From Octopus sinensis (taxonomy: Eukaryota), in assembly GCF_006345805.1 (NCBI RefSeq), contig NC_043016.1, forward strand, positions 14,508,001 to 14,572,000: a stretch of DNA of 64,000 bases, in the 5' to 3' direction. Shown here in pieces: positions 9,037 to 56,838 of the stretch. Within the stretch, counting starts at the first letter, position 1, and the number at the start of each line of letters is the position of its first letter. Position numbers and translations under genes: made by a program. The notes below the pieces were generated by a model. That model did not search any database. It was not told the DNA's origin and saw only the letters and a program-made list of their open reading frames with translations.

Positions 9037-9108
<72 letters not shown>

Positions 9109-9112
9109 TATA
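9037..9112. repeat. (TA)n microsatellite
   Basis: Near-perfect run abutting a (CAT)n RTE tail. Confidence 0.95.
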
Positions 9113-9660
9113 TCATCATCATCATTTAGCGTCCGCTTTCCATGCTAGCATGGGTTGGACGGTTCGACTGGGGTCTGGGAAGCCAGAAGGCTGCATCAGG
9201 CCCAGTCCAATCTGGCAGTGTTTCTACAGCTTGATGCCCTTCCTAACGCCAACCACTCCGTGAGTGTAGTTGGTGCTTTTTATGTGCCACCGGCATGAAA
9301 GCCAGTCAAGGTGGCGCAGGCATCGGCCACGTTCGGATGGTGCATTTTACGTGCCACCGGCACATGTATCGTAACTACAATTTCTATTTGATATTTATTT
9401 TGATGTTGATGTACTTGACTGAATAGGTCTCCTCAAGAACAGCGGGTCACTCTACGATCCAAGGTTAGCACAGCAGGTCGTTCTGCAATCCAAGGTACTT
9501 TGAATGGGCTGGGGCTATGCGAAACTGGTGCAGGAAGCAGCCCGAGTCTTTGCAGTCACAGCATATCTGCAGAGATCTCGGTGTTTCTTCATTGTCTCTG
9601 TGAAGCCCAGCATTTGAAGGTCATGCTTGACTACCTCATTCCATGTCTTCCTGGGTCTAT
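9113..9660 (-). mobile_element. RTE 3' UTR plus ORF end
   Basis: (CAT)n-TTTAGCGTCCGCTTTCCATGCTAGC...GCCCTTCCTAACGCCAACCAC, then ORF-end similarity near 9560-9660. Confidence 0.85.
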
Positions 9661-13836: not shown

Positions 13837-14310
13837 TTGACGGATATTTGTCCTCATCTTGTTTGATTTTAACACAACGTTTCAGCTGATATACCCTCCA
13901 GCCTTCATCAGATGTCTTGGGGAAATTTCAAACCTGGGTTCTCATTCCTAAGGTATTTTTCGATGTTGTTATTATTATTATTATTATTTATTATTATTCA
14001 GGTCACTGCCTGGAATCAAACTCGGAATTTTCGGCTTAGTAGCCCACACTCTTAACCAGTATGCCACGGGCATATGGCGTTGTGGTTAAGAGCATGGGCT
14101 ACTAACCCCAAGATTCCAAGTTCGATTCCAGGCAATGACCTGTTTAATAATAAATAATAATAATAATAATAGTAATAATAACATCGAAAAATACCTTAGG
14201 AATGAGAACCCAGGTTTGAAATTTCCCCAAGACACCTGATGAAGGCTGGAGGGTATATCAGTCAAAACGTTGTGTTAACAACAAAGAAGACGAGGACAAA
14301 TATCCGTCAA
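13837..14310. mobile_element. head-to-head pair of a tRNA-headed, hammerhead-bearing element
   Basis: Inverted arms at 13837-14066 and 14075-14310. Each has A/B-box-like TGGCGTTGTGG / GTTCGATTCC, then (AAT)n, then GACAC-CTGATGA-AGGCTG...CAGYY-RAAA-CGTT-GTGTT. Confidence 0.85.
13871..13916 (-). ncRNA. minimal type I hammerhead ribozyme motif
   Basis: GACAT-CTGATGA-A-GGCTG(GAGGGTATAT)CAGCT-GAAA-CG-TT-GTGTT. Core intact; the mirror copy at 14231-14276 has G12A. Confidence 0.7.
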
Positions 14311-26352: not shown

Positions 26353-26452
26353 NNNNNNNNNNNNNNNNNNNNNNNNNNNNNNNNNNNNNNNNNNNNNNNN
26401 NNNNNNNNNNNNNNNNNNNNNNNNNNNNNNNNNNNNNNNNNNNNNNNNNNNN
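26353..26452. other. assembly gap (100 N)
   Basis: Run of N. Confidence 1.
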
Positions 26453-32491: not shown

Positions 32492-32639
32492 GTGTATCTG
32501 AGGAGAGTCATTCTGTTTTAATACCTTATTATTTAGCACACTCACTGGTTTGATTTCCACTCATTTACTTATTTATTTAGTTTTCCTCCAAAATTTTTGT
32601 TGCTTCTTGCAACCTCTTCAATAGCTGTTGACTGTCCAT

Positions 32640-33094
32640 TATTGGAGTTGTGTTCTTTTTGTTTATTTGTTTGTTTGTGCACATGTGTGTGCATCAGTGT
32701 GCATGTGTATACACATATGTATGTATGTATGTATGTATTTATGTATGTATGTGTGTGTGTGTGTATGTATGTATGCATGTATGTATGTATGTATGTATGT
32801 ATGTATGTATGTGTGTATGTATGAATGTATGCATGTATGTATGTATGTATGTATGTATGTTTGTATGTACGTATGTATGTATGTATGTATGTATGTATGT
32901 ATGTATGTATGTATGTACGTATGTACGGATGTATGTATGTATGTATGTATGTATGTATGTATGTACGGATGTATGTATGTATGTATGTTTGTATGTATGT
33001 ATGTATGTATGTATGTATGTATGTGTATGTATGAATGTATGTATGTATGTATGCATGTATGTATGTAATGTATGTATGTATGTATGTATGTATG

Positions 33095-33125
<31 letters not shown>

Positions 33126-34260
33126 TGTATGTATGCATGTATGTATGTATGTATGTATGTATGTATGTATGTATGTATGCATGTATGTATGTATGTATGT
33201 ATTTATGTATGTATGTGTGTGTGTATGTATGTATGTATGTATGTATGCATGTATGTATGTATGTATGTATGTATGTGTGTATGTATGTATGCCTGTATGT
33301 ATGTATGTATGTATGTATGTATGTATGTATGTATATGCTTGTGTATGTATGTTGTATGTTATGATTTATGAATGTATGTATGAATGTATGTATGTAGTAT
33401 GTATGTATGTATGTATGTATGTATTTTATGTAAGAATGTATGTATGTATGTATGTATGTATGTATGTATGTATGTATATGCGTGTGTATGTATGTATGTA
33501 TGTATGTATGTATGATAATGTATGTATGTATGTATGCATGTATGTATGTATGTATGTATGTATGCATGTATGTATGTATTGTATGTATGTGTGTATGTAT
33601 GTATGTATGCATGTATGTATGTATGCATGCATGCATGTATGTATGTATGTATGTATGTATGTATGCATGCATGCATGCATGCATGTATGTATGCATGCAT
33701 GCATGTATGTATGTATGCATACATGCATGCATGTATGTATATATGTATGCATGCATGCATGTATGCATGCATGCATGTATGTATGTATGTATGCATGCAT
33801 GCATGCATGTATGTATGTATGTATGTATGCATGCATGCATGCATGCATGTATGTATGCATGCATGCATGTATGTATGTGTGTATGTATGTATGTATGTGT
33901 GCATGTGTGCATATATGTATGTGTATGTGTTTATATGTATTCTGCATATTCATGTGTTTGTGTGTGCATGTTTGCATGCTAGTATTGTGTGTGTGTATGT
34001 GTGCATGCTTGTCTGCCCATATCACTTATGGGCCTATCTATCTGCTTACCTACCTGTTTACCTCCATATCCCTTTACCTACCTAACTATATATATATATA
34101 TATATATAAATGTATGTATGTATATGTGTGTATATATATGTATATATAAATGTATGTGTATATATTATTTATATGTATATATATATGCATATATGTATAT
34201 ATATATATATATGTACATATATATATATGTATATATATGTATTATATATATATAAATATA

Positions 34261-34439: not shown

Positions 34440-34935
34440 GATGTTTCATTTATGAGGATGTACTCCTGTATTTGTCTGAGTGATGGGTCCTTCGGGTGCT
34501 TGGATAAAATGTTGATGTTGATTCAGCCCAATGTGCCTTCATGTTGGTCTTTAGAGTATGGAGGACTGTTTTCTTGTCATCATGTTGTCTCAAATGTTCA
34601 TTTAGTCTTTCCGCAATTCTCCTAGATGTCTCAGCAATGTATGTCATGTTCTTGTCTTTACAAGCACCCCCTAGACACCTTATGCTGTAGACTACATTTC
34701 TAGTTCTACAGTTAATGCCAGGGTTAATCTTACATACCATGTAGTTCTCATGGGTGCATGTGATATTCTCGAAAGGGTATGTCTTACACAACTGTGATCT
34801 GATGGAGCTCTCTGGTTTTTCAATGATCTTAATGTTATGTTTGGTCTCCTTTAGAGCTTTCCTAGATAATAAGGAGTCCATCCAGAAGAGTTGCAGGAGA
34901 TTCTGAAGTCGTCTGGGGGCCATGGTTGAAGCCAA
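34440..34935 (-). mobile_element. Penelope-like element GIY-YIG endonuclease relic
   Basis: CKINPGINCRTRNVVYSIRCLGGACKDKNMTYIAETSRRIAERLNEH gives the VVY...YI(G)ET.R...R..EH motif with a Cys-rich linker. Confidence 0.8.
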
Positions 34936-36099: not shown

Positions 36100-37100
36100 G
36101 AATGCTCTAATATTTATATTGCAGGGAAAAGGCCCTATCAAGAATATGGAAGAAAATCTTAAGGTTATTTGTTTTCAAAACGAAATAATCTGCATGTTAC
36201 ATAATTAAAATGTATTATTTAAATTTTTGTATGTCTTACTTCTATCAAGGATCTTCCACTGCATGTTAAATCGGCTACCATATTCTTTCAGTGTCCAGAC
36301 CTGATCAGATAATTCAGTTACATTCCTCTTTTCTATGTTCCCAAAGGAAGAAATATGGTCGGAATACCTTTTCTTGAGTCTGACTTTTATCATGCTGCAT
36401 AATGCTTATGTGCATTGTTTGGTATGATGGAGGTGAATGCTGCTTCATAGATAATAGCTTCAGCATTGCACGACTGATTAAGAACGCATGTATCTCTGCA
36501 TACAGAATACCTGTCAGTTGTTCTGGTTGGATTACATTGAAGTTTACATGTTGGTGTAGCTGCAGCTCAGCTTTATGCTGTTTCATTTGGATAATTTTCT
36601 ATGTCGGTGATTAATTTGGAAATAGTTATTTATTAAGTCTGGAAAGTACTTTGCAATATAACTCAGTCTTTTCTTCTTGGTGGTGATGACAGATGTTAGG
36701 AGATGTGGTTAATATCACTGCTTTCGCTTACTTCTTGTACTTTGTCGTTTCAGGGTTAAGCTTTGTCAAAGATTTCCTTTTTAGGGGGAAGATTATGGAA
36801 GATTGTTATTAAGCTTTTGAAAACTATGGATGGTGATAAGACTAATAATATTTGTGAAATTTTCATCGAGTTTGGTATATGGGCACTATCTCAGAAATTT
36901 ATGGTACTCAGGTTTGTGATCATGACTAATTTTCCCTAAGCTTATCTAAGGTACATCTACTGGCGTATTGTAATGTAACCAGCCCATCATCTCTACATTA
37001 GTCAGTAGTACATGGTTATGAATTTTGTTTAGTGTATTTTAGCATTACAGACAATCACAGATTTAAACCACAAAATATTCTTACTATATCCATTGATAGT
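36100..37100 (-). mobile_element. Penelope-like element relic (RT thumb plus GIY-YIG)
   Basis: RDDGL (36980-36994), IAKYFPDLINNYFQINHRHRK..SIKLSCS, C..C...IIYEA and KKRYSDH...ELSDQVWTLKE...WKIL. Confidence 0.78.
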
Positions 37101-54073: not shown

Positions 54074-54148
<75 letters not shown>

Positions 54149-54760
54149 TATTAGGTGTATTATATTATTCTTATTAGATGAAGTATAAACAGAGGAAGGA
54201 GAAAGTTATCAAAAGAGAAATAATAGTGCATTTAAGAAATCAATATATCTTAAGATTATTGTAGTTATGTAGGGATGAAAAGGTATATAAAAGAGGAATA
54301 CACATATATATATATACACATATACACACACAAACACAAACCCACACACAAACATACACACATACACACACACACACATATATATATACATATATATTTA
54401 CATACAAACATACCCACAGGTACATACATATTACATGTGTTATGTACCTATGGGTATGTTTGTGCATAAATATATATGTATATATATATATGTATGTGCG
54501 TGTATGTATATATATATATATATATGTATTCCTCATTTATATACCTTTTCATTCCTACATAACTACAATAATCTTAAGATATATTGAATTCTTAAATTCC
54601 ACTATTATTTCTCTTTTGATAACTTTCTCCTTCCTCTGTTTATACTTCATCTAATAAGAATAATATAATACACCTAATAATGATAATAATAATAATTGAT
54701 TCCTCTGTATGCATAGTCCTTTGTATGCATATACATATACATATAAATATATATATATGT
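52981..54760. repeat. inverted (fold-back) duplication with a LINE in the left arm
   Basis: 54148-54426 mirrors 54441-54680 (14-nt spacer), and 52981-53067 mirrors 54681-54760. Confidence 0.85.
53068..54073 (-). mobile_element. 5'-truncated R4/Dong-like non-LTR element (zinc knuckle plus restriction-like endonuclease)
   Basis: LHG...ETEGFLIAAQDQ, CRICGDGQETINHIISSC, RHD, RPDIVV, LIDVSIP and KLSKYKDL. One frameshift near 53510. Flanked by (ATT)n on both sides. Confidence 0.92.
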
Positions 54761-54991
54761 ATAATGTCTAAAAGTTGATGAACACCACCTCTTGATCCCA
54801 TCCATTTTCTTATTGCTGTATAAATTAAGGGTAAAAAAAAACTTTTTACCCTCACCCATTTATTACATTCAGTAGTGTGATTGCCATGCAATGAACACTT
54901 GTGTATTAATAATTGGGTATTCTACCAGCAGTATATTGGATAGATATTATCCTTAGTTGGTTGGATTCACAACCTCTAACTCTCTTTGAAT

Positions 54992-55023
<32 letters not shown>

Positions 55024-55241
55024 ATATATAATAATAAATCTCTAAGCGAGGTATAAACAGTAACTGCTCTGTAATATAAGCGGGACCAGCCATCTGAATG
55101 TGGCTAGGGACAGGGCGGGGTGGTGGGGGTGTTACTGATGCATTTAGCCCCAGGCGACTATAGACGTCACCAGGAGAGCCGACACCATCACGGTGTCCTT
55201 GCTAGCCTGTAAAGGGAGATCAGCCTCCCCGAAGATACGGA

Positions 55242-55296
55242 TGCTACACACGGACCGGTTTCGAGGTGGTCGCCTCTCGTCAGCGCATGGCAAGCA
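55242..55296 (-). ncRNA. type I hammerhead ribozyme (mirror copy)
   Basis: Exact reverse complement of 55465-55519. Confidence 0.85.
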
Positions 55297-55464
55297 CCGT
55301 TCTTCGTTGAGGGACTTCCTCTACAGGCTAGAATATATAGATTTTCACTGTAAACACAGTCACAGGCGTCGAAAAGCTGTTCGATAACAATAATAAATCT
55401 CTTGTGTTTACAGTGAAAATCTATATATTCTAGCCTGTAGAGGAAGTCCCTCAACGAAGAACGG

Positions 55465-55519
55465 TGCTTGCCATGCGCTGACGAGAGGCGACCACCTCGA
55501 AACCGGTCCGTGTGTAGCA
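55465..55519 (+). ncRNA. type I hammerhead ribozyme, complete core
   Basis: TGCTTGCCATGCG-CTGACGA-GAGG(CGACCA)CCTC-GAAA-CCGG-TC-CGTGTGTAGCA. Predicted cleavage after 55508. Confidence 0.85.
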
Positions 55520-55717
55520 TCCGTATCTTCGGGGAGGCTGATCTCCCTTTACAGGCTAGCAAGGACACCGTGATGGTGTCGGCTCTCCTGGTGACATCTA
55601 TAGTCGCCTGGGGCTAAATGCATCAGTAACACCCCCACCACCCCGCCCTGTCCCTAGCCACATTCAGATGGCTGGTCCCGCTTATATTATATATATTTAT
55701 ATATATATATATATATA

Positions 55718-55920
55718 TTGGCTCTCGTGCTGGTGGCACATAAAAGCAGCCACTACACTCTCAGAGTGGTTGGCATTAGGAAGGGCATCCAGCTGTAGAA
55801 ACTCTGCCAGATCAGATTGGAGCATGGTGCAGCCATCTGGTTCACCAGTCCTCAGTCAAATCGTCCAACCCATGCTAGCATGGAAAACGGACGTTAAATG
55901 ATGATGATGATGATGATGAT
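55718..55920 (+). mobile_element. RTE 3' UTR copy
   Basis: Consensus block ending CGGACGTTAAAT(GAT)n. Confidence 0.85.
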
Positions 55921-55924
55921 AATA

Positions 55925-56672
55925 TATATATGCTTCCGGCACCAGTTCCACATAGCCCTTGCCCATTCAAAGTACCTTGGGTCCCAGAACATCTCGCTGT
56001 GCTTGAGGAGACCTGTTGAGTCAAGTGCATGTACATGAACATTGAAACAAATATCAATGGAAATAGTAGTTGTGATACCTGTGCCGGTGGCACATAAAAA
56101 GCACCATCCGAACGTGGCCGTTGCCAGCGCCGCCTCGACTGGCTTCTGTTCTGGTGACACATAAAAAGCACCATCCGAATGTAGCCGATGCCAGCGCCTT
56201 CTCGACTGGCTTCTGTTCTGGTGGCACATAAAAAGCACATCCGAACGTGGCCGTTGCCAGCGCCGCCTCGACTGGCTTCTGTTCTGGTGACACATAAAAA
56301 GCACCATCCGAATGTAGCCGATGCCAGCGCCTTCTCGACTGGCTTCTGTTCTGGTGGCACATAAAAAGCACCATCTGAACGTGGCCGATGCCAGCGCCGC
56401 CTTGGCTGGCTTCCGTGCCAGTGGCACGTTAAAAGCACCAACCGATCGTGGCTGATGCCAGACCCCCCCCTGGCACCTGTGCAGGTGGCACGTAAAAAGC
56501 ACCCACTACACTCGCGGAGTGGTTGGCATTAGGAAGGGCATCCAGCCGTAGAAACACTGCCAGATCAGACTGGAGCCTGGTGCTGCCCCTGGCTTCCCAG
56601 ACCCCAGTTGAACCGTCCAACCCATGCTAGCACGGAAAACGGACGTTAAACGAGGATGATGATGATGATGAT
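55925..56672 (+). mobile_element. RTE 3' UTR copy with a 67-bp tandem array
   Basis: Unit starts at 56086, 56153, 56220, 56286, 56353 and 56420; (GAT)n tail. Confidence 0.9.
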
Positions 56673-56838
56673 AAGCATTTAAAGGTAGAAGATAAGATAA
56701 ATTGCAATTAAAATGTTAAATGGCATTAAATTTGAGTCATAAAATGGAGAAAACAATGAGATAACATATGTCTACACACACACATGAACAACCAAAATGC
56801 TCATGTGTATGCACATACACACACACATATACATACTT

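What the first reader, a model, noticed from the sequence alone, without database searches (positions are those of the whole stretch)
55030..55689. Retrozyme-like 359-nt monomer with an intact hammerhead, captured as a near-perfect palindrome
Seen: 287-bp arms with one CpG-type mismatch and a 44-bp spacer, with (TA)n at both outer ends. AATAATAAATCTCT at 55030-55043 recurs at 55389-55402, so the left copy is one 359-bp unit plus 14 nt of the next, as expected from copying a circular or tandem RNA. All HHR core nucleotides are canonical: helix I is 6+4 bp with an internal loop, helix II is 4 bp, and helix III is palindromic ACCGGT with GUC cleavage. The HHR is enclosed by a longer stem (CTAGCCTGTA/TACAGGCTAG), and further hairpins follow (GACACC/GGTGTC, AGCCA/TGGCT). 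There is no credible ORF. Established: metazoan non-LTR retrozymes are small HHR repeats that yield circRNAs. Inference: a recently active cephalopod retrozyme family.
Basis: partly seen in the sequence, partly recalled or inferred. Interest (0 to 1): 0.92.

Follow-up and report, generated by a model that had tools for sequence, protein, structure and literature searches.

The report
Hammerhead retroelement inserted as inverted pair
A young 660-bp insertion in an octopus-like genome consists of two head-to-head copies of a small non-coding mobile element that carries a self-cutting hammerhead RNA motif, and its layout looks like the known footprint of Penelope-type retrotransposition, so it is a new example of a known kind of element.

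Summary
The arms 55072-55358 and 55403-55689 (287 nt) differ at one CpG site and are separated by 44 nt. A 14-nt direct repeat bounds the left copy, giving a 359-nt unit plus 14 nt. (TA)n lies on both sides. Each copy carries a complete type I hammerhead (core at 55478 + and 55283 -): helix I 6 bp, helix II 4 bp, helix III one A:U pair closing a palindromic CCGG loop. That is the canonical metazoan architecture, thought to work as a dimer. My descriptor found 0 hits in 600 shuffles. Rfam scores the motif far below threshold (12 vs 34 bits).

The retrozyme-like reading is reasonable but only partly testable. I could reach no other copy, no tandem array and no RNA data. The palindrome is best read as a Penelope-like-element (PLE) insertion footprint: an inverted 5'-truncated copy, a partial tandem, a 42-nt tail at one 3' end only, and a (TA)n target. 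PLE enzymes are reported to cut and extend both target strands. The window also holds a PLE endonuclease fragment and a second head-to-head pair carrying a PLE-type minimal hammerhead.

This locus has one hammerhead per transcript, so it cannot itself release a 359-nt circle. Verdict: a new member of a known kind, of moderate interest.

The parts
54990..55029 (.). Left half of the (TA)n microsatellite that was the insertion target
   Evidence: Sequence; TA runs.
55030..55402 (-). Longer copy, with the hammerhead (sense) strand on the minus strand: 373 nt = one 359-nt unit plus 14 nt of the next turn. The 5' end is at 55402 and the 3' end at 55030.
   Evidence: (D17).
55030..55071 (-). 42-nt 3' extension ('tail') present only in the longer copy. 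It ends in AGAGATTTATTATT next to (TA)n.
   Evidence: The arm boundary is at 55071/55072 and nothing matches outward of it. Compare the 30-40 bp one-sided tail of PLE insertions (PMC8557442, PMC11167929).
55030..55043 (.). 14-nt direct repeat AATAATAAATCTCT, copy 1
   Evidence: D17.
55389..55402 (.). 14-nt direct repeat, copy 2. It abuts the head-to-head junction 55402|55403.
   Evidence: D17.
55072..55358 (-). Left arm of the inverted repeat (287 nt)
   Evidence: I1.
55247..55289 (-). Hammerhead of the left copy. The predicted cleavage lies between 55253 and 55252 on the minus strand.
   Evidence: mirror image of the alignment.
55359..55402 (-). 44-nt spacer: the 5'-most 44 nt of the longer copy, absent from the other copy
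55403..55689 (+). Right arm: inverted copy of 287 nt. It lacks 44 nt at its 5' end and the 42-nt tail at its 3' end.
   Evidence: I1.
55472..55514 (+). Hammerhead of the right copy. The predicted cleavage lies between 55508 and 55509 (GUC|CGUG).
   Evidence: Rfam RF00163 aligns end to end at 55472-55514, at 12.1 bits.
55596..55596 (.). The only difference between the arms (partner position 55165): CpG in the left copy, CpA on the sense strand of the right copy
55690..55718 (.). Right half of the (TA)n target. A SINE-like repeat follows from 55719.
   Evidence: (D7, D9).

Best explanation
The locus is one young, dead-end insertion of a small non-coding retroelement with a 359-nt unit, a non-LTR-retrozyme-like element. 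The unit carries a canonical metazoan type I hammerhead and has landed in a (TA)n microsatellite of an octopus-like genome.

Proposed mechanism (inferred): a Penelope-like-element (PLE) reverse transcriptase/GIY-YIG endonuclease cut both strands of the AT-rich target. Each 3' end primed reverse transcription of element RNA, starting at two sites 42 nt apart. One cDNA ran 373 nt, more than one full unit. The other ran 287 nt. The two were then joined 5'-to-5' at 55402|55403. That gives two copies with their 3' ends pointing outward, a 44-nt unique centre and a 42-nt one-sided tail.

Both copies run uninterrupted across the ribozyme cleavage site, and one exceeds unit length. The template was therefore not a cleaved linear monomer. 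It was a religated circle or an uncleaved multimeric transcript, and the evidence does not decide between the two.

In a source locus with tandem units, the weak helix III (A:U plus CCGG) would let two adjacent ribozymes pair into a double hammerhead, cut out 359-nt monomers and allow circularisation by host ligase. This locus has one sense ribozyme per transcript and cannot do that. If transcribed, it would mainly form a 287-bp hairpin.

Shown here: the anatomy, the non-chance hammerhead, the predicted structure, PLE relics in the window, and a second inverted pair. Inferred: the PLE enzyme, dual priming, the template form, and ribozyme activity.
For: - Geometry of the arms, spacer, 14-nt repeat and single CpG mismatch.
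- Hammerhead with all core positions, 6-bp helix I and 4-bp helix II. There were 0 hits in 600 shuffles. This matches the published 'canonical' metazoan type I description: helix I 6 bp, helix II 4 bp, helix III 1-2 bp closed by a 2-4 nt palindromic loop, active as dimers (PMC4209133; PMC7229834).
- Unit size falls within the mussel retrozyme range of 350-390 bp.
- The fold is more stable than shuffles: z = -3.6 as a circle and z = -3.4 as a linear RNA with 0 of 100 shuffles as good. The ribozyme sits at the end of a ~50-bp imperfect stem.
- Published PLE insertion features (PMC8557442): 5' truncation, partial tandems, an inverted 5'-truncated copy at the 5' end, a 30-40 bp tail often at one end only, and (TA)n targets.
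- A purified PLE protein cuts and extends both target strands, prefers AT-rich DNA, and starts reverse transcription at two adjacent internal sites that define the tail (PMC11167929).
- (TA)>=8 runs cover only 0.9% of the window, so landing inside one by chance is unlikely.
- A GIY-YIG ORF fragment lies at 34450-34935(-), beside a (TA)n tract. It has 341 relatives, some with weak, sub-threshold reverse-transcriptase plus GIY-YIG matches. The nearest named relative is from Octopus bimaculoides.
- A second head-to-head pair at 13837-14310 carries a PLE-type minimal hammerhead with the same 5'-inward topology.
- CpG o/e is 0.85 in the unit against 0.40 in the window.
- Recently active Penelope families are reported in O. 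vulgaris (PMC13282606).
Against: - I found no second copy of this 359-nt family anywhere: not in the window, the protein collection, the metagenome scan, the viral contigs, or five cephalopod-related loci.
- Unit length rests on a single A/T-rich 14-nt repeat.
- There is no detectable sequence similarity to any PLE flank available here.
- GC is 51%, above the <45-50% reported for metazoan retrozymes.
- Rfam does not support the ribozyme statistically (12.1 bits, E = 2.3).
- The loop-loop contacts that make such ribozymes fast cannot be recognised.
- The predicted lowest-energy fold pairs CGGU of helix III with GCUG of the core, an inactive form.
- A target-site duplication cannot be read inside (TA)n.
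- Palindromes without any ribozyme also occur nearby (54143-54685), so other palindrome-forming processes act in this region.
Confidence: 0.6

Rival explanations
1. A single 373-nt retroelement copy was inserted first. The right arm arose later, or during second-strand synthesis, by a DNA-level fold-back: snap-back of the cDNA on itself, or replication template switching. No dual-strand priming is involved.
For: The arms are almost identical and the spacer is short. At least one palindrome without a ribozyme lies 350 bp upstream, at 54143-54685.
Against: There is no microhomology at the inner junction that would seed a snap-back (inward comparison). The right arm stops exactly where an A/T-rich stretch of the element (CTTATATTA) meets (TA)n, 42 nt short of the other 3' end. 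The two-start-site tail of PLEs explains that without a further assumption. A second ribozyme-bearing pair has the same topology.
Confidence: 0.15
2. The sequence is the terminal repeat (pseudo-LTR) remnant of an autonomous, 5'-truncated Penelope-like element, not a separate non-autonomous retrozyme.
For: PLE pseudo-LTRs carry hammerheads and form the same inverted structures. Opposite-strand hammerhead pairs 100-700 bp apart have been reported and attributed to truncated PLEs.
Against: The hammerhead is of the canonical type (helix I 6 bp, helix II 4 bp, CCGG helix III). It is not the minimal PLE type with a long helix II, a bulged base and a short helix I. That minimal type occurs in this window at 13911 and in the octopus locus L002. 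The 14-nt repeat closes the unit at 359 nt with no ORF inside. There is no similarity to the PLE flanks available here.
Confidence: 0.1
3. The inversion is an assembly or library artefact: a chimeric hairpin read or a mis-joined repeat.
For: The assembly is scaffolded, with a 100-N gap at 26353-26452. PLE-type structures are known to trouble shotgun assemblies.
Against: The structure is only 660 bp and lies inside a contig. It has a unique 44-nt centre, asymmetric ends and one difference between the arms. A fold-back read artefact would give identical, symmetric arms. The N gap is 29 kb away.
Confidence: 0.07
4. The 14-nt repeat is a target-site duplication around a 345-bp SINE-like insertion, so there is no unit longer than one copy. 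The hammerhead element would then be an ordinary LINE-mobilised short element.
For: A length of 14 bp is typical for LINE-type duplications. LINE fragments are abundant in the window.
Against: The right arm copies only internal sequence and starts immediately after the second 14-mer. That would require a second, exactly placed event. There is no poly(A) or simple-repeat tail at the 3' end.
Confidence: 0.05
5. The locus is an endogenised cDNA of an exogenous viroid-like or delta-like circular RNA that carries a hammerhead.
For: The size (359 nt), the strong self-pairing and a template longer than one unit are all compatible with a replicating circle.
Against: There is a ribozyme in one polarity only, and no other Rfam ribozyme at E<=10 on either strand. 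The hammerhead is of the genomic metazoan type I kind. The insertion architecture points to a resident retroelement machinery.
Confidence: 0.03

Closest known systems
Metazoan non-LTR retrozymes (Cervera and de la Pena 2020, PMC7229834), especially the 350-390 bp repeats of the mussel Mytilus galloprovincialis
   Same: Canonical type I hammerhead with a weak, palindromic helix III. Unit of a few hundred nt (359). No ORF, LTR, primer-binding site or polypurine tract. Strongly self-paired predicted RNA. Coexistence with PLEs in a mollusc genome.
   Different: Here there is no tandem array: 1.04 units plus an inverted 0.8 unit. GC is 51% rather than below 45-50%. Copy number, circRNA and cleavage are unknown. 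There is no sequence comparison with the mussel elements.
Insertion architecture of Penelope-like elements (Craig et al. 2021, PMC8557442; Frangieh et al. 2024, PMC11167929)
   Same: An inverted 5'-truncated copy joined head-to-head to a copy with a partial tandem. A one-sided terminal extension (42 nt against the reported 30-40 bp). An AT-rich/(TA)n target.
   Different: The inserted unit encodes no reverse transcriptase or endonuclease. It shows no similarity to the PLE sequences I could reach. Its hammerhead is the canonical type, not the minimal PLE variant.
Newt/axolotl satellite 2 hammerhead (HHR_Amex1)
   Same: Helix III reduced to one base pair closed by a palindromic tetraloop, so efficient cleavage is expected only in dimers.
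   Different: Different sequence and host phylum. The conserved loop 1-loop 2 contacts of the amphibian ribozyme are not recognisable here.
L1 'twin priming' inversions
   Same: Both target strands prime cDNA synthesis, giving an inverted 5' segment.
   Different: Twin priming copies different parts of one linear RNA and does not duplicate sequence. Here both arms copy the same 287 nt, which needs two templates or a circular or multimeric one.

Membership tests
Hammerhead ribozyme, type I (canonical metazoan form) | Conserved core: C3 U4 G5 A6 N7 G8 A9, G12 A13 A14, A15.1:U16.1, and H17 not G | tested here: met
   CUGACGA ... GAAA ... U C| on both copies.
Hammerhead ribozyme, type I (canonical metazoan form) | Three helices around the core with helix I open-ended: helix I about 6 bp, helix II about 4 bp, helix III 1-2 bp with a 2-4 nt palindromic loop | tested here: met
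   Helix I 6 bp (two G.U), helix II GAGG/CCUC with a 6-nt loop, helix III A:U plus CCGG. Definition taken from PMC4209133.
Hammerhead ribozyme, type I (canonical metazoan form) | Score at or above the Rfam RF00163 gathering threshold | tested here: not met
   12.1 bits against 34, E = 2.3, and only in a 76-nt scan. Nothing. The loss is in helix I and II sequence and the 2-nt shorter helix III, not in the core.
Hammerhead ribozyme, type I (canonical metazoan form) | Loop 1-loop 2 tertiary contacts | tested here: inconclusive
   Helix I has only a small bulge after 6 bp and loop 2 is CGACCA. The conserved contact nucleotides are not evident. Mussel retrozyme ribozymes also lack most of them.
Hammerhead ribozyme, type I (canonical metazoan form) | Self-cleavage at H17 | not testable with these tools
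   Needs in vitro transcription of monomer and dimer.
Non-LTR retrozyme | Short tandem repeats (dimers to multimers) of 150-450 bp, each with a type I hammerhead | tested here: not met
   The unit length of 359 is in range. This locus has one unit plus 14 nt and an inverted partial copy. Solo copies of retrozyme families are described, so the family may still qualify.
Non-LTR retrozyme | Multi-copy family in the genome | not testable with these tools
   No other copy in the 64 kb. No DNA search of cephalopod genomes is available. Indirect searches were negative.
Non-LTR retrozyme | Non-coding: no ORF, LTR, primer-binding site or polypurine tract | tested here: met
   Only short ORFs, with no relatives.
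Non-LTR retrozyme | Low GC (<45-50%) | tested here: not met
   GC is 50-51% for the unit and 54% for the arm, against 38% for the window.
Non-LTR retrozyme | Highly self-paired RNA expressed as a covalently closed circle | tested here: inconclusive
   Self-pairing is supported (z = -3.6 and -3.4). Circular RNA cannot be tested here.
Non-LTR retrozyme | Coexistence with autonomous Penelope-like elements | tested here: met
   GIY-YIG ORF fragment at 34450-34935(-) with 341 relatives, some with weak, sub-threshold reverse-transcriptase plus GIY-YIG matches. PLE-type minimal hammerheads in the window and in the octopus locus L002.
Penelope-like-element-type insertion | Inverted 5'-truncated copy adjacent to the 5' end of a copy | tested here: met
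   Both sense copies have their 5' ends at 55402|55403. The right copy lacks the first 44 nt.
Penelope-like-element-type insertion | Partial tandem (pseudo-LTR) | tested here: met
   14 nt of a second unit (D17). This is minimal and rests on one repeat.
Penelope-like-element-type insertion | [quoted passage not shown] | tested here: met
   The 42 nt at 55030-55071 are present at the 3' end of one copy only.
Penelope-like-element-type insertion | AT-rich or microsatellite target | tested here: met
   (TA)n on both sides.
Penelope-like-element-type insertion | Sequence relationship of the element to a PLE pseudo-LTR | tested here: inconclusive
   No similarity to the few PLE-related loci reachable (L002-L006 and the window). 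Cephalopod PLE consensus libraries were not available.

The most novel reading that the evidence does not exclude
This single locus may be a junction-level footprint showing that a canonical-hammerhead retrozyme RNA, either a circle or an uncleaved multimer, was reverse-transcribed by the Penelope-like machinery through priming on both target strands. That would be direct structural evidence for the proposed PLE-retrozyme partnership, in a lineage (cephalopods) where retrozymes have not been described. A further untested possibility is that such inverted insertions act as hairpin-RNA loci. These could feed small-RNA silencing of the family, or serve as ADAR substrates in an animal with very heavy RNA editing.
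Probability: 0.4. Interest if true: 0.6.

Novelty: new member of a known kind. Interest (0 to 1): 0.4.

Why it matters
Retrozymes are the natural ribozyme route to circular RNA in animals. The enzyme that mobilises them has been inferred mostly from co-occurrence with Penelope-like elements and from pseudo-LTR phylogeny.

A clean, young insertion can test that link at the level of the integration mechanism. This one carries the PLE hallmarks: an inverted truncated partner, a one-sided tail, a (TA)n target and a length above one unit. It would also extend retrozymes to cephalopods. So far, type I hammerhead hits there have only been counted: 235 in the giant squid genome (PMC6962438).

On its own, one locus adds an example, not a principle.

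Tried and rejected
- Rfam at gathering thresholds on the whole window found nothing. Rfam at E<=10 on 901 nt gave only spurious hairpin or AT-rich matches and no ribozyme.
- BLAST of the unit against the window found only itself and its inverted partner.
- I tried to reach family members through called ORFs. A homologue search with the 126-aa ORF across the centre and one with a six-frame translation of 1.3 units gave no hit. The second search returned 8000 candidates, possibly a cap, so it is a weak negative.
- Exact look-ups of the 64-, 49- and 126-aa ORFs were not on record.
- A metagenome scan with a degenerate hammerhead pattern gave one unrelated eukaryote-like contig. It shares only the ribozyme, 39 nt.
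- Two viral-contig scans gave nothing.
- A homologue search with the GIY-YIG ORF in the word-indexed collection gave nothing. The exhaustive representative search did work.
- The unit has no similarity to the O. bimaculoides PLE-like locus or to the Logan contigs.
- The 5' part of the second inverted pair looks tRNA-like by eye, but ARAGORN and Rfam did not confirm this.
- Short similarities between the unit and the neighbouring SINE-like repeat (D11, D12) lie in inconsistent orientations. I treat them as chance.
- A snap-back origin was considered. There is no microhomology at the inner junction.

Full report
**1. What is in the sequence**

The repeat finder reports arms 55072-55358 and 55403-55689, each 287 nt, with 44 nt between them. 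A base-by-base comparison finds a single difference: 55165 C against 55596 A. On the ribozyme strand this is CpG in the left copy and CpA in the right copy. The match stops abruptly at both the outer and the inner ends.

AATAATAAATCTCT occurs at 55030-55043 and again at 55389-55402, 359 nt apart (D17). It abuts the (TA)n flank on one side and the inversion junction on the other. (TA)n runs flank the whole structure. The window contains no other copy of the element.

**2. The hammerhead**

On the plus strand of the right arm, and on the minus strand of the left copy, the sequence reads CAUGCG-CUGACGA-GAGG-CGACCA-CCUC-GAAA-CCGG-UC|CGUGUG.

- All core positions are canonical.
- Helix I has 6 bp, two of them G.U, and continues after a bulge into a ~50-bp imperfect stem.
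- Helix II has 4 bp with a 6-nt loop.
ACCGGU cannot fold on itself as three pairs. Within one molecule it is a single A:U pair closing a palindromic CCGG tetraloop.

This is the published 'canonical' metazoan type I architecture: helix I 6 bp, helix II 4 bp, and helix III 1-2 bp capped by a 2-4 nt palindromic loop. Such ribozymes are inefficient as monomers and active when two copies form an extended intermolecular helix III (PMC4209133). The axolotl ribozyme HHR_Amex1 is described in the same terms (PMC7229834).

A descriptor I wrote finds only these two sites in both strands of the 64 kb. It requires the core, helix II of at least 4 bp, a short self-complementary helix III and helix I of at least 5 bp. 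It finds none in 300 dinucleotide-preserving shuffles of the window, and none in 300 shuffles at the element's own composition.

Rfam does not help. There is no hit at gathering score and none in a 901-nt permissive scan. Only a 76-nt scan shows a full-length RF00163 alignment, at 12.1 bits against a gathering score of 34. The core aligns perfectly. The score is lost in helices I and II, which differ from the narrow seed, and in helix III. Ribozyme activity itself is untested.

**3. The unit as an RNA**

Taken as a 359-nt circle, the unit has a predicted minimum free energy of -122 kcal/mol, z = -3.6 against shuffles. As a linear monomer the value is -123.7 kcal/mol, z = -3.4, and none of 100 dinucleotide shuffles folds as well.

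In the lowest-energy fold, the CGGU of helix III pairs with GCUG of the catalytic core. That is an inactive conformer, as would suit a stable monomeric circle, but this is a prediction only.

The element's ORFs are short and have no relatives. GC is 50-51% against 38% for the window. CpG o/e is 0.85 against 0.40. Together with one difference in 287 nt, this points to a young insertion.

**4. Host and neighbours**

An ORF at 34450-34935(-) gives a weak GIY-YIG match. An exhaustive search finds 341 relatives. Some of them show weak reverse-transcriptase plus C-terminal GIY-YIG matches, which is the PLE arrangement. The closest named relative is an Octopus bimaculoides protein at 54% identity.

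Window repeats match the O. bimaculoides locus L002 at 87-92% identity. The cephalopod assignment is therefore reasonable. Recently active Penelope families are reported for O. vulgaris (PMC13282606).

**5. Why a palindrome**

Define sense as the ribozyme strand. The left copy then runs from 55402 (5') to 55030 (3'), and the right copy from 55403 (5') to 55689 (3'). The two copies are joined 5'-to-5' with their 3' ends pointing outward.

- The right copy lacks the first 44 nt, which form the 'spacer'.
- The right copy also ends 42 nt earlier at its 3' end, at CTTATATTA|(TA)n.
- The left copy continues through 42 more nt to AGAGATTTATTATT|(TA)n.

[quoted passage not shown] They often have an inverted 5'-truncated copy next to the 5' end, a 30-40 bp tail often at one end only, and a bias for microsatellite targets including (TA)n (PMC8557442).

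A purified PLE protein cuts and extends both strands of an AT-rich target. It initiates reverse transcription at two adjacent internal sites, and the distance between them accounts for the tail (PMC11167929). Opposite-strand hammerhead pairs 100-700 bp apart were noted in 2014.

Every one of these features is present here. (TA)>=8 tracts cover only 0.9% of the window, so the target is unlikely to be accidental.

The window also holds an independent, older example. At 13837-14310, two copies of another non-coding element meet 5'-to-5' (88% identity over 236 nt). That element carries a PLE-type minimal hammerhead: a bulged base, a long helix II and a short helix I, ending GAAACGUU. The same element occurs in the octopus locus L002.

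**6. Template and consequences**

Both copies run uninterrupted across GUC|CGUG, and one exceeds unit length by 14 nt. The template was therefore not a cleaved linear monomer. It was a religated circle or an uncleaved multimer, and I cannot tell which.

The locus has a single sense ribozyme per transcript and a helix III that needs a partner. It should therefore not release a 359-nt monomer or circle. It corresponds to the 'solo' offspring described for vertebrate retrozyme families. If transcribed, it would form a 287-bp hairpin.

**7. Rivals**

- A DNA-level fold-back, or snap-back of a single cDNA, is possible. It has no microhomology at the inner junction and does not explain the 42-nt difference at the 3' ends.
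- A pseudo-LTR remnant of an autonomous PLE is unlikely. The ribozyme is of the canonical type, and the 14-nt repeat closes a 359-nt unit with no ORF.
- An assembly artefact is unlikely. The structure is 660 bp and internal to a contig, with a unique centre, asymmetric ends and one arm difference. The only N gap is 29 kb away.
- The 14-mer as a target-site duplication would need a second, precisely placed event.
- An endogenised exogenous circular RNA is not excluded. There is no ribozyme on the other polarity.

**8. What could not be done**

None of the tools searches cephalopod genomes or transcriptomes by DNA. The central prediction, that related copies exist in tandem or permuted form, therefore stays open. 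All indirect attempts were negative. These negatives say little, because non-coding eukaryotic repeats are hardly represented in the collections searched.

**9. Verdict**

The retrozyme-like interpretation is partly supported:

- The ribozyme type, unit size, non-coding nature, self-pairing and PLE coexistence are met.
- Tandem organisation and low GC are not met at this locus.
- Family size, circles and cleavage are untested.

The palindrome is explained by a known integration architecture. Type I hammerheads have already been counted in a cephalopod genome: 235 in the giant squid (PMC6962438). I found no paper describing cephalopod retrozymes. The finding is a new member of a known kind. Its modest added value is as a clean junction-level link between a canonical-hammerhead element and PLE-type integration.

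Noticed in passing
window 13837-14310: A second head-to-head inverted pair (88% identity over 236 nt, centre near 14070) of a non-coding element. It carries a PLE-type minimal hammerhead (CTGATGA-A-GGCTGG...CAGCT-GAAACGTT|GTG on the minus strand at 13911). The plus-strand partner near 14236 has lost GAAA. The same element occurs in the O. bimaculoides locus L002 at about 9100-9290. Its 5' part looks tRNA-like by eye (GTTCGATTCC), but ARAGORN and Rfam do not call it.
   Followed up: partly
window 54143-54685: A third palindrome of about 540 bp, 350 bp upstream of the finding. The outer 94 nt are 95% complementary, the core is CA/TA microsatellite-like, and (TTA)n lies on both sides. It has no hammerhead motif and its origin is unknown.
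   Followed up: no
window 34450-34935 (-) and 36205-36393 (-): ORF fragments that look like the GIY-YIG endonuclease end of 5'-truncated Penelope-like elements. The first was tested: weak Pfam hit, 341 relatives, nearest named relative from Octopus bimaculoides. About 120 nt further on it is followed by a long (TA)n-rich tract. The second was judged by eye only.
   Followed up: partly
window 55719-55925 and 56073-56674: A SINE-like repeat lies directly after the right (TA)n. A second copy (87-91% identity, D9/D10) is preceded by a 67-nt tandem array of about 6.5 units built from the repeat's own 5' region.
   Followed up: no
L001 (metagenome contig Ga0209038_10022143), 768-805 minus strand: An unrelated AT-rich 1873-nt contig whose ends repeat, so it is circular or tandem. 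It carries a type I hammerhead with the same GAAACCGGUC helix III (CTGATGAGGGGCAACAACCCCGAAACCGGTC|CTGTG) and what looks like a tRNA gene. Only the ribozyme matches the window.
   Followed up: partly
window 32569-34150: About 1.5 kb of imperfect (CATA/CACA/TGTA)-type microsatellite gives long spurious ORFs in several frames and many overlapping self-complementary matches.
   Followed up: no
L002 11245 (+) and 9201 (-): Two PLE-type minimal hammerhead motifs flank the O. bimaculoides PLE-like gene XP_052825841.1. The downstream one (CTGAAGA-G-ATTGCA...TGCAAT-GAAA) lies about 400 nt after the stop codon.
   Followed up: no
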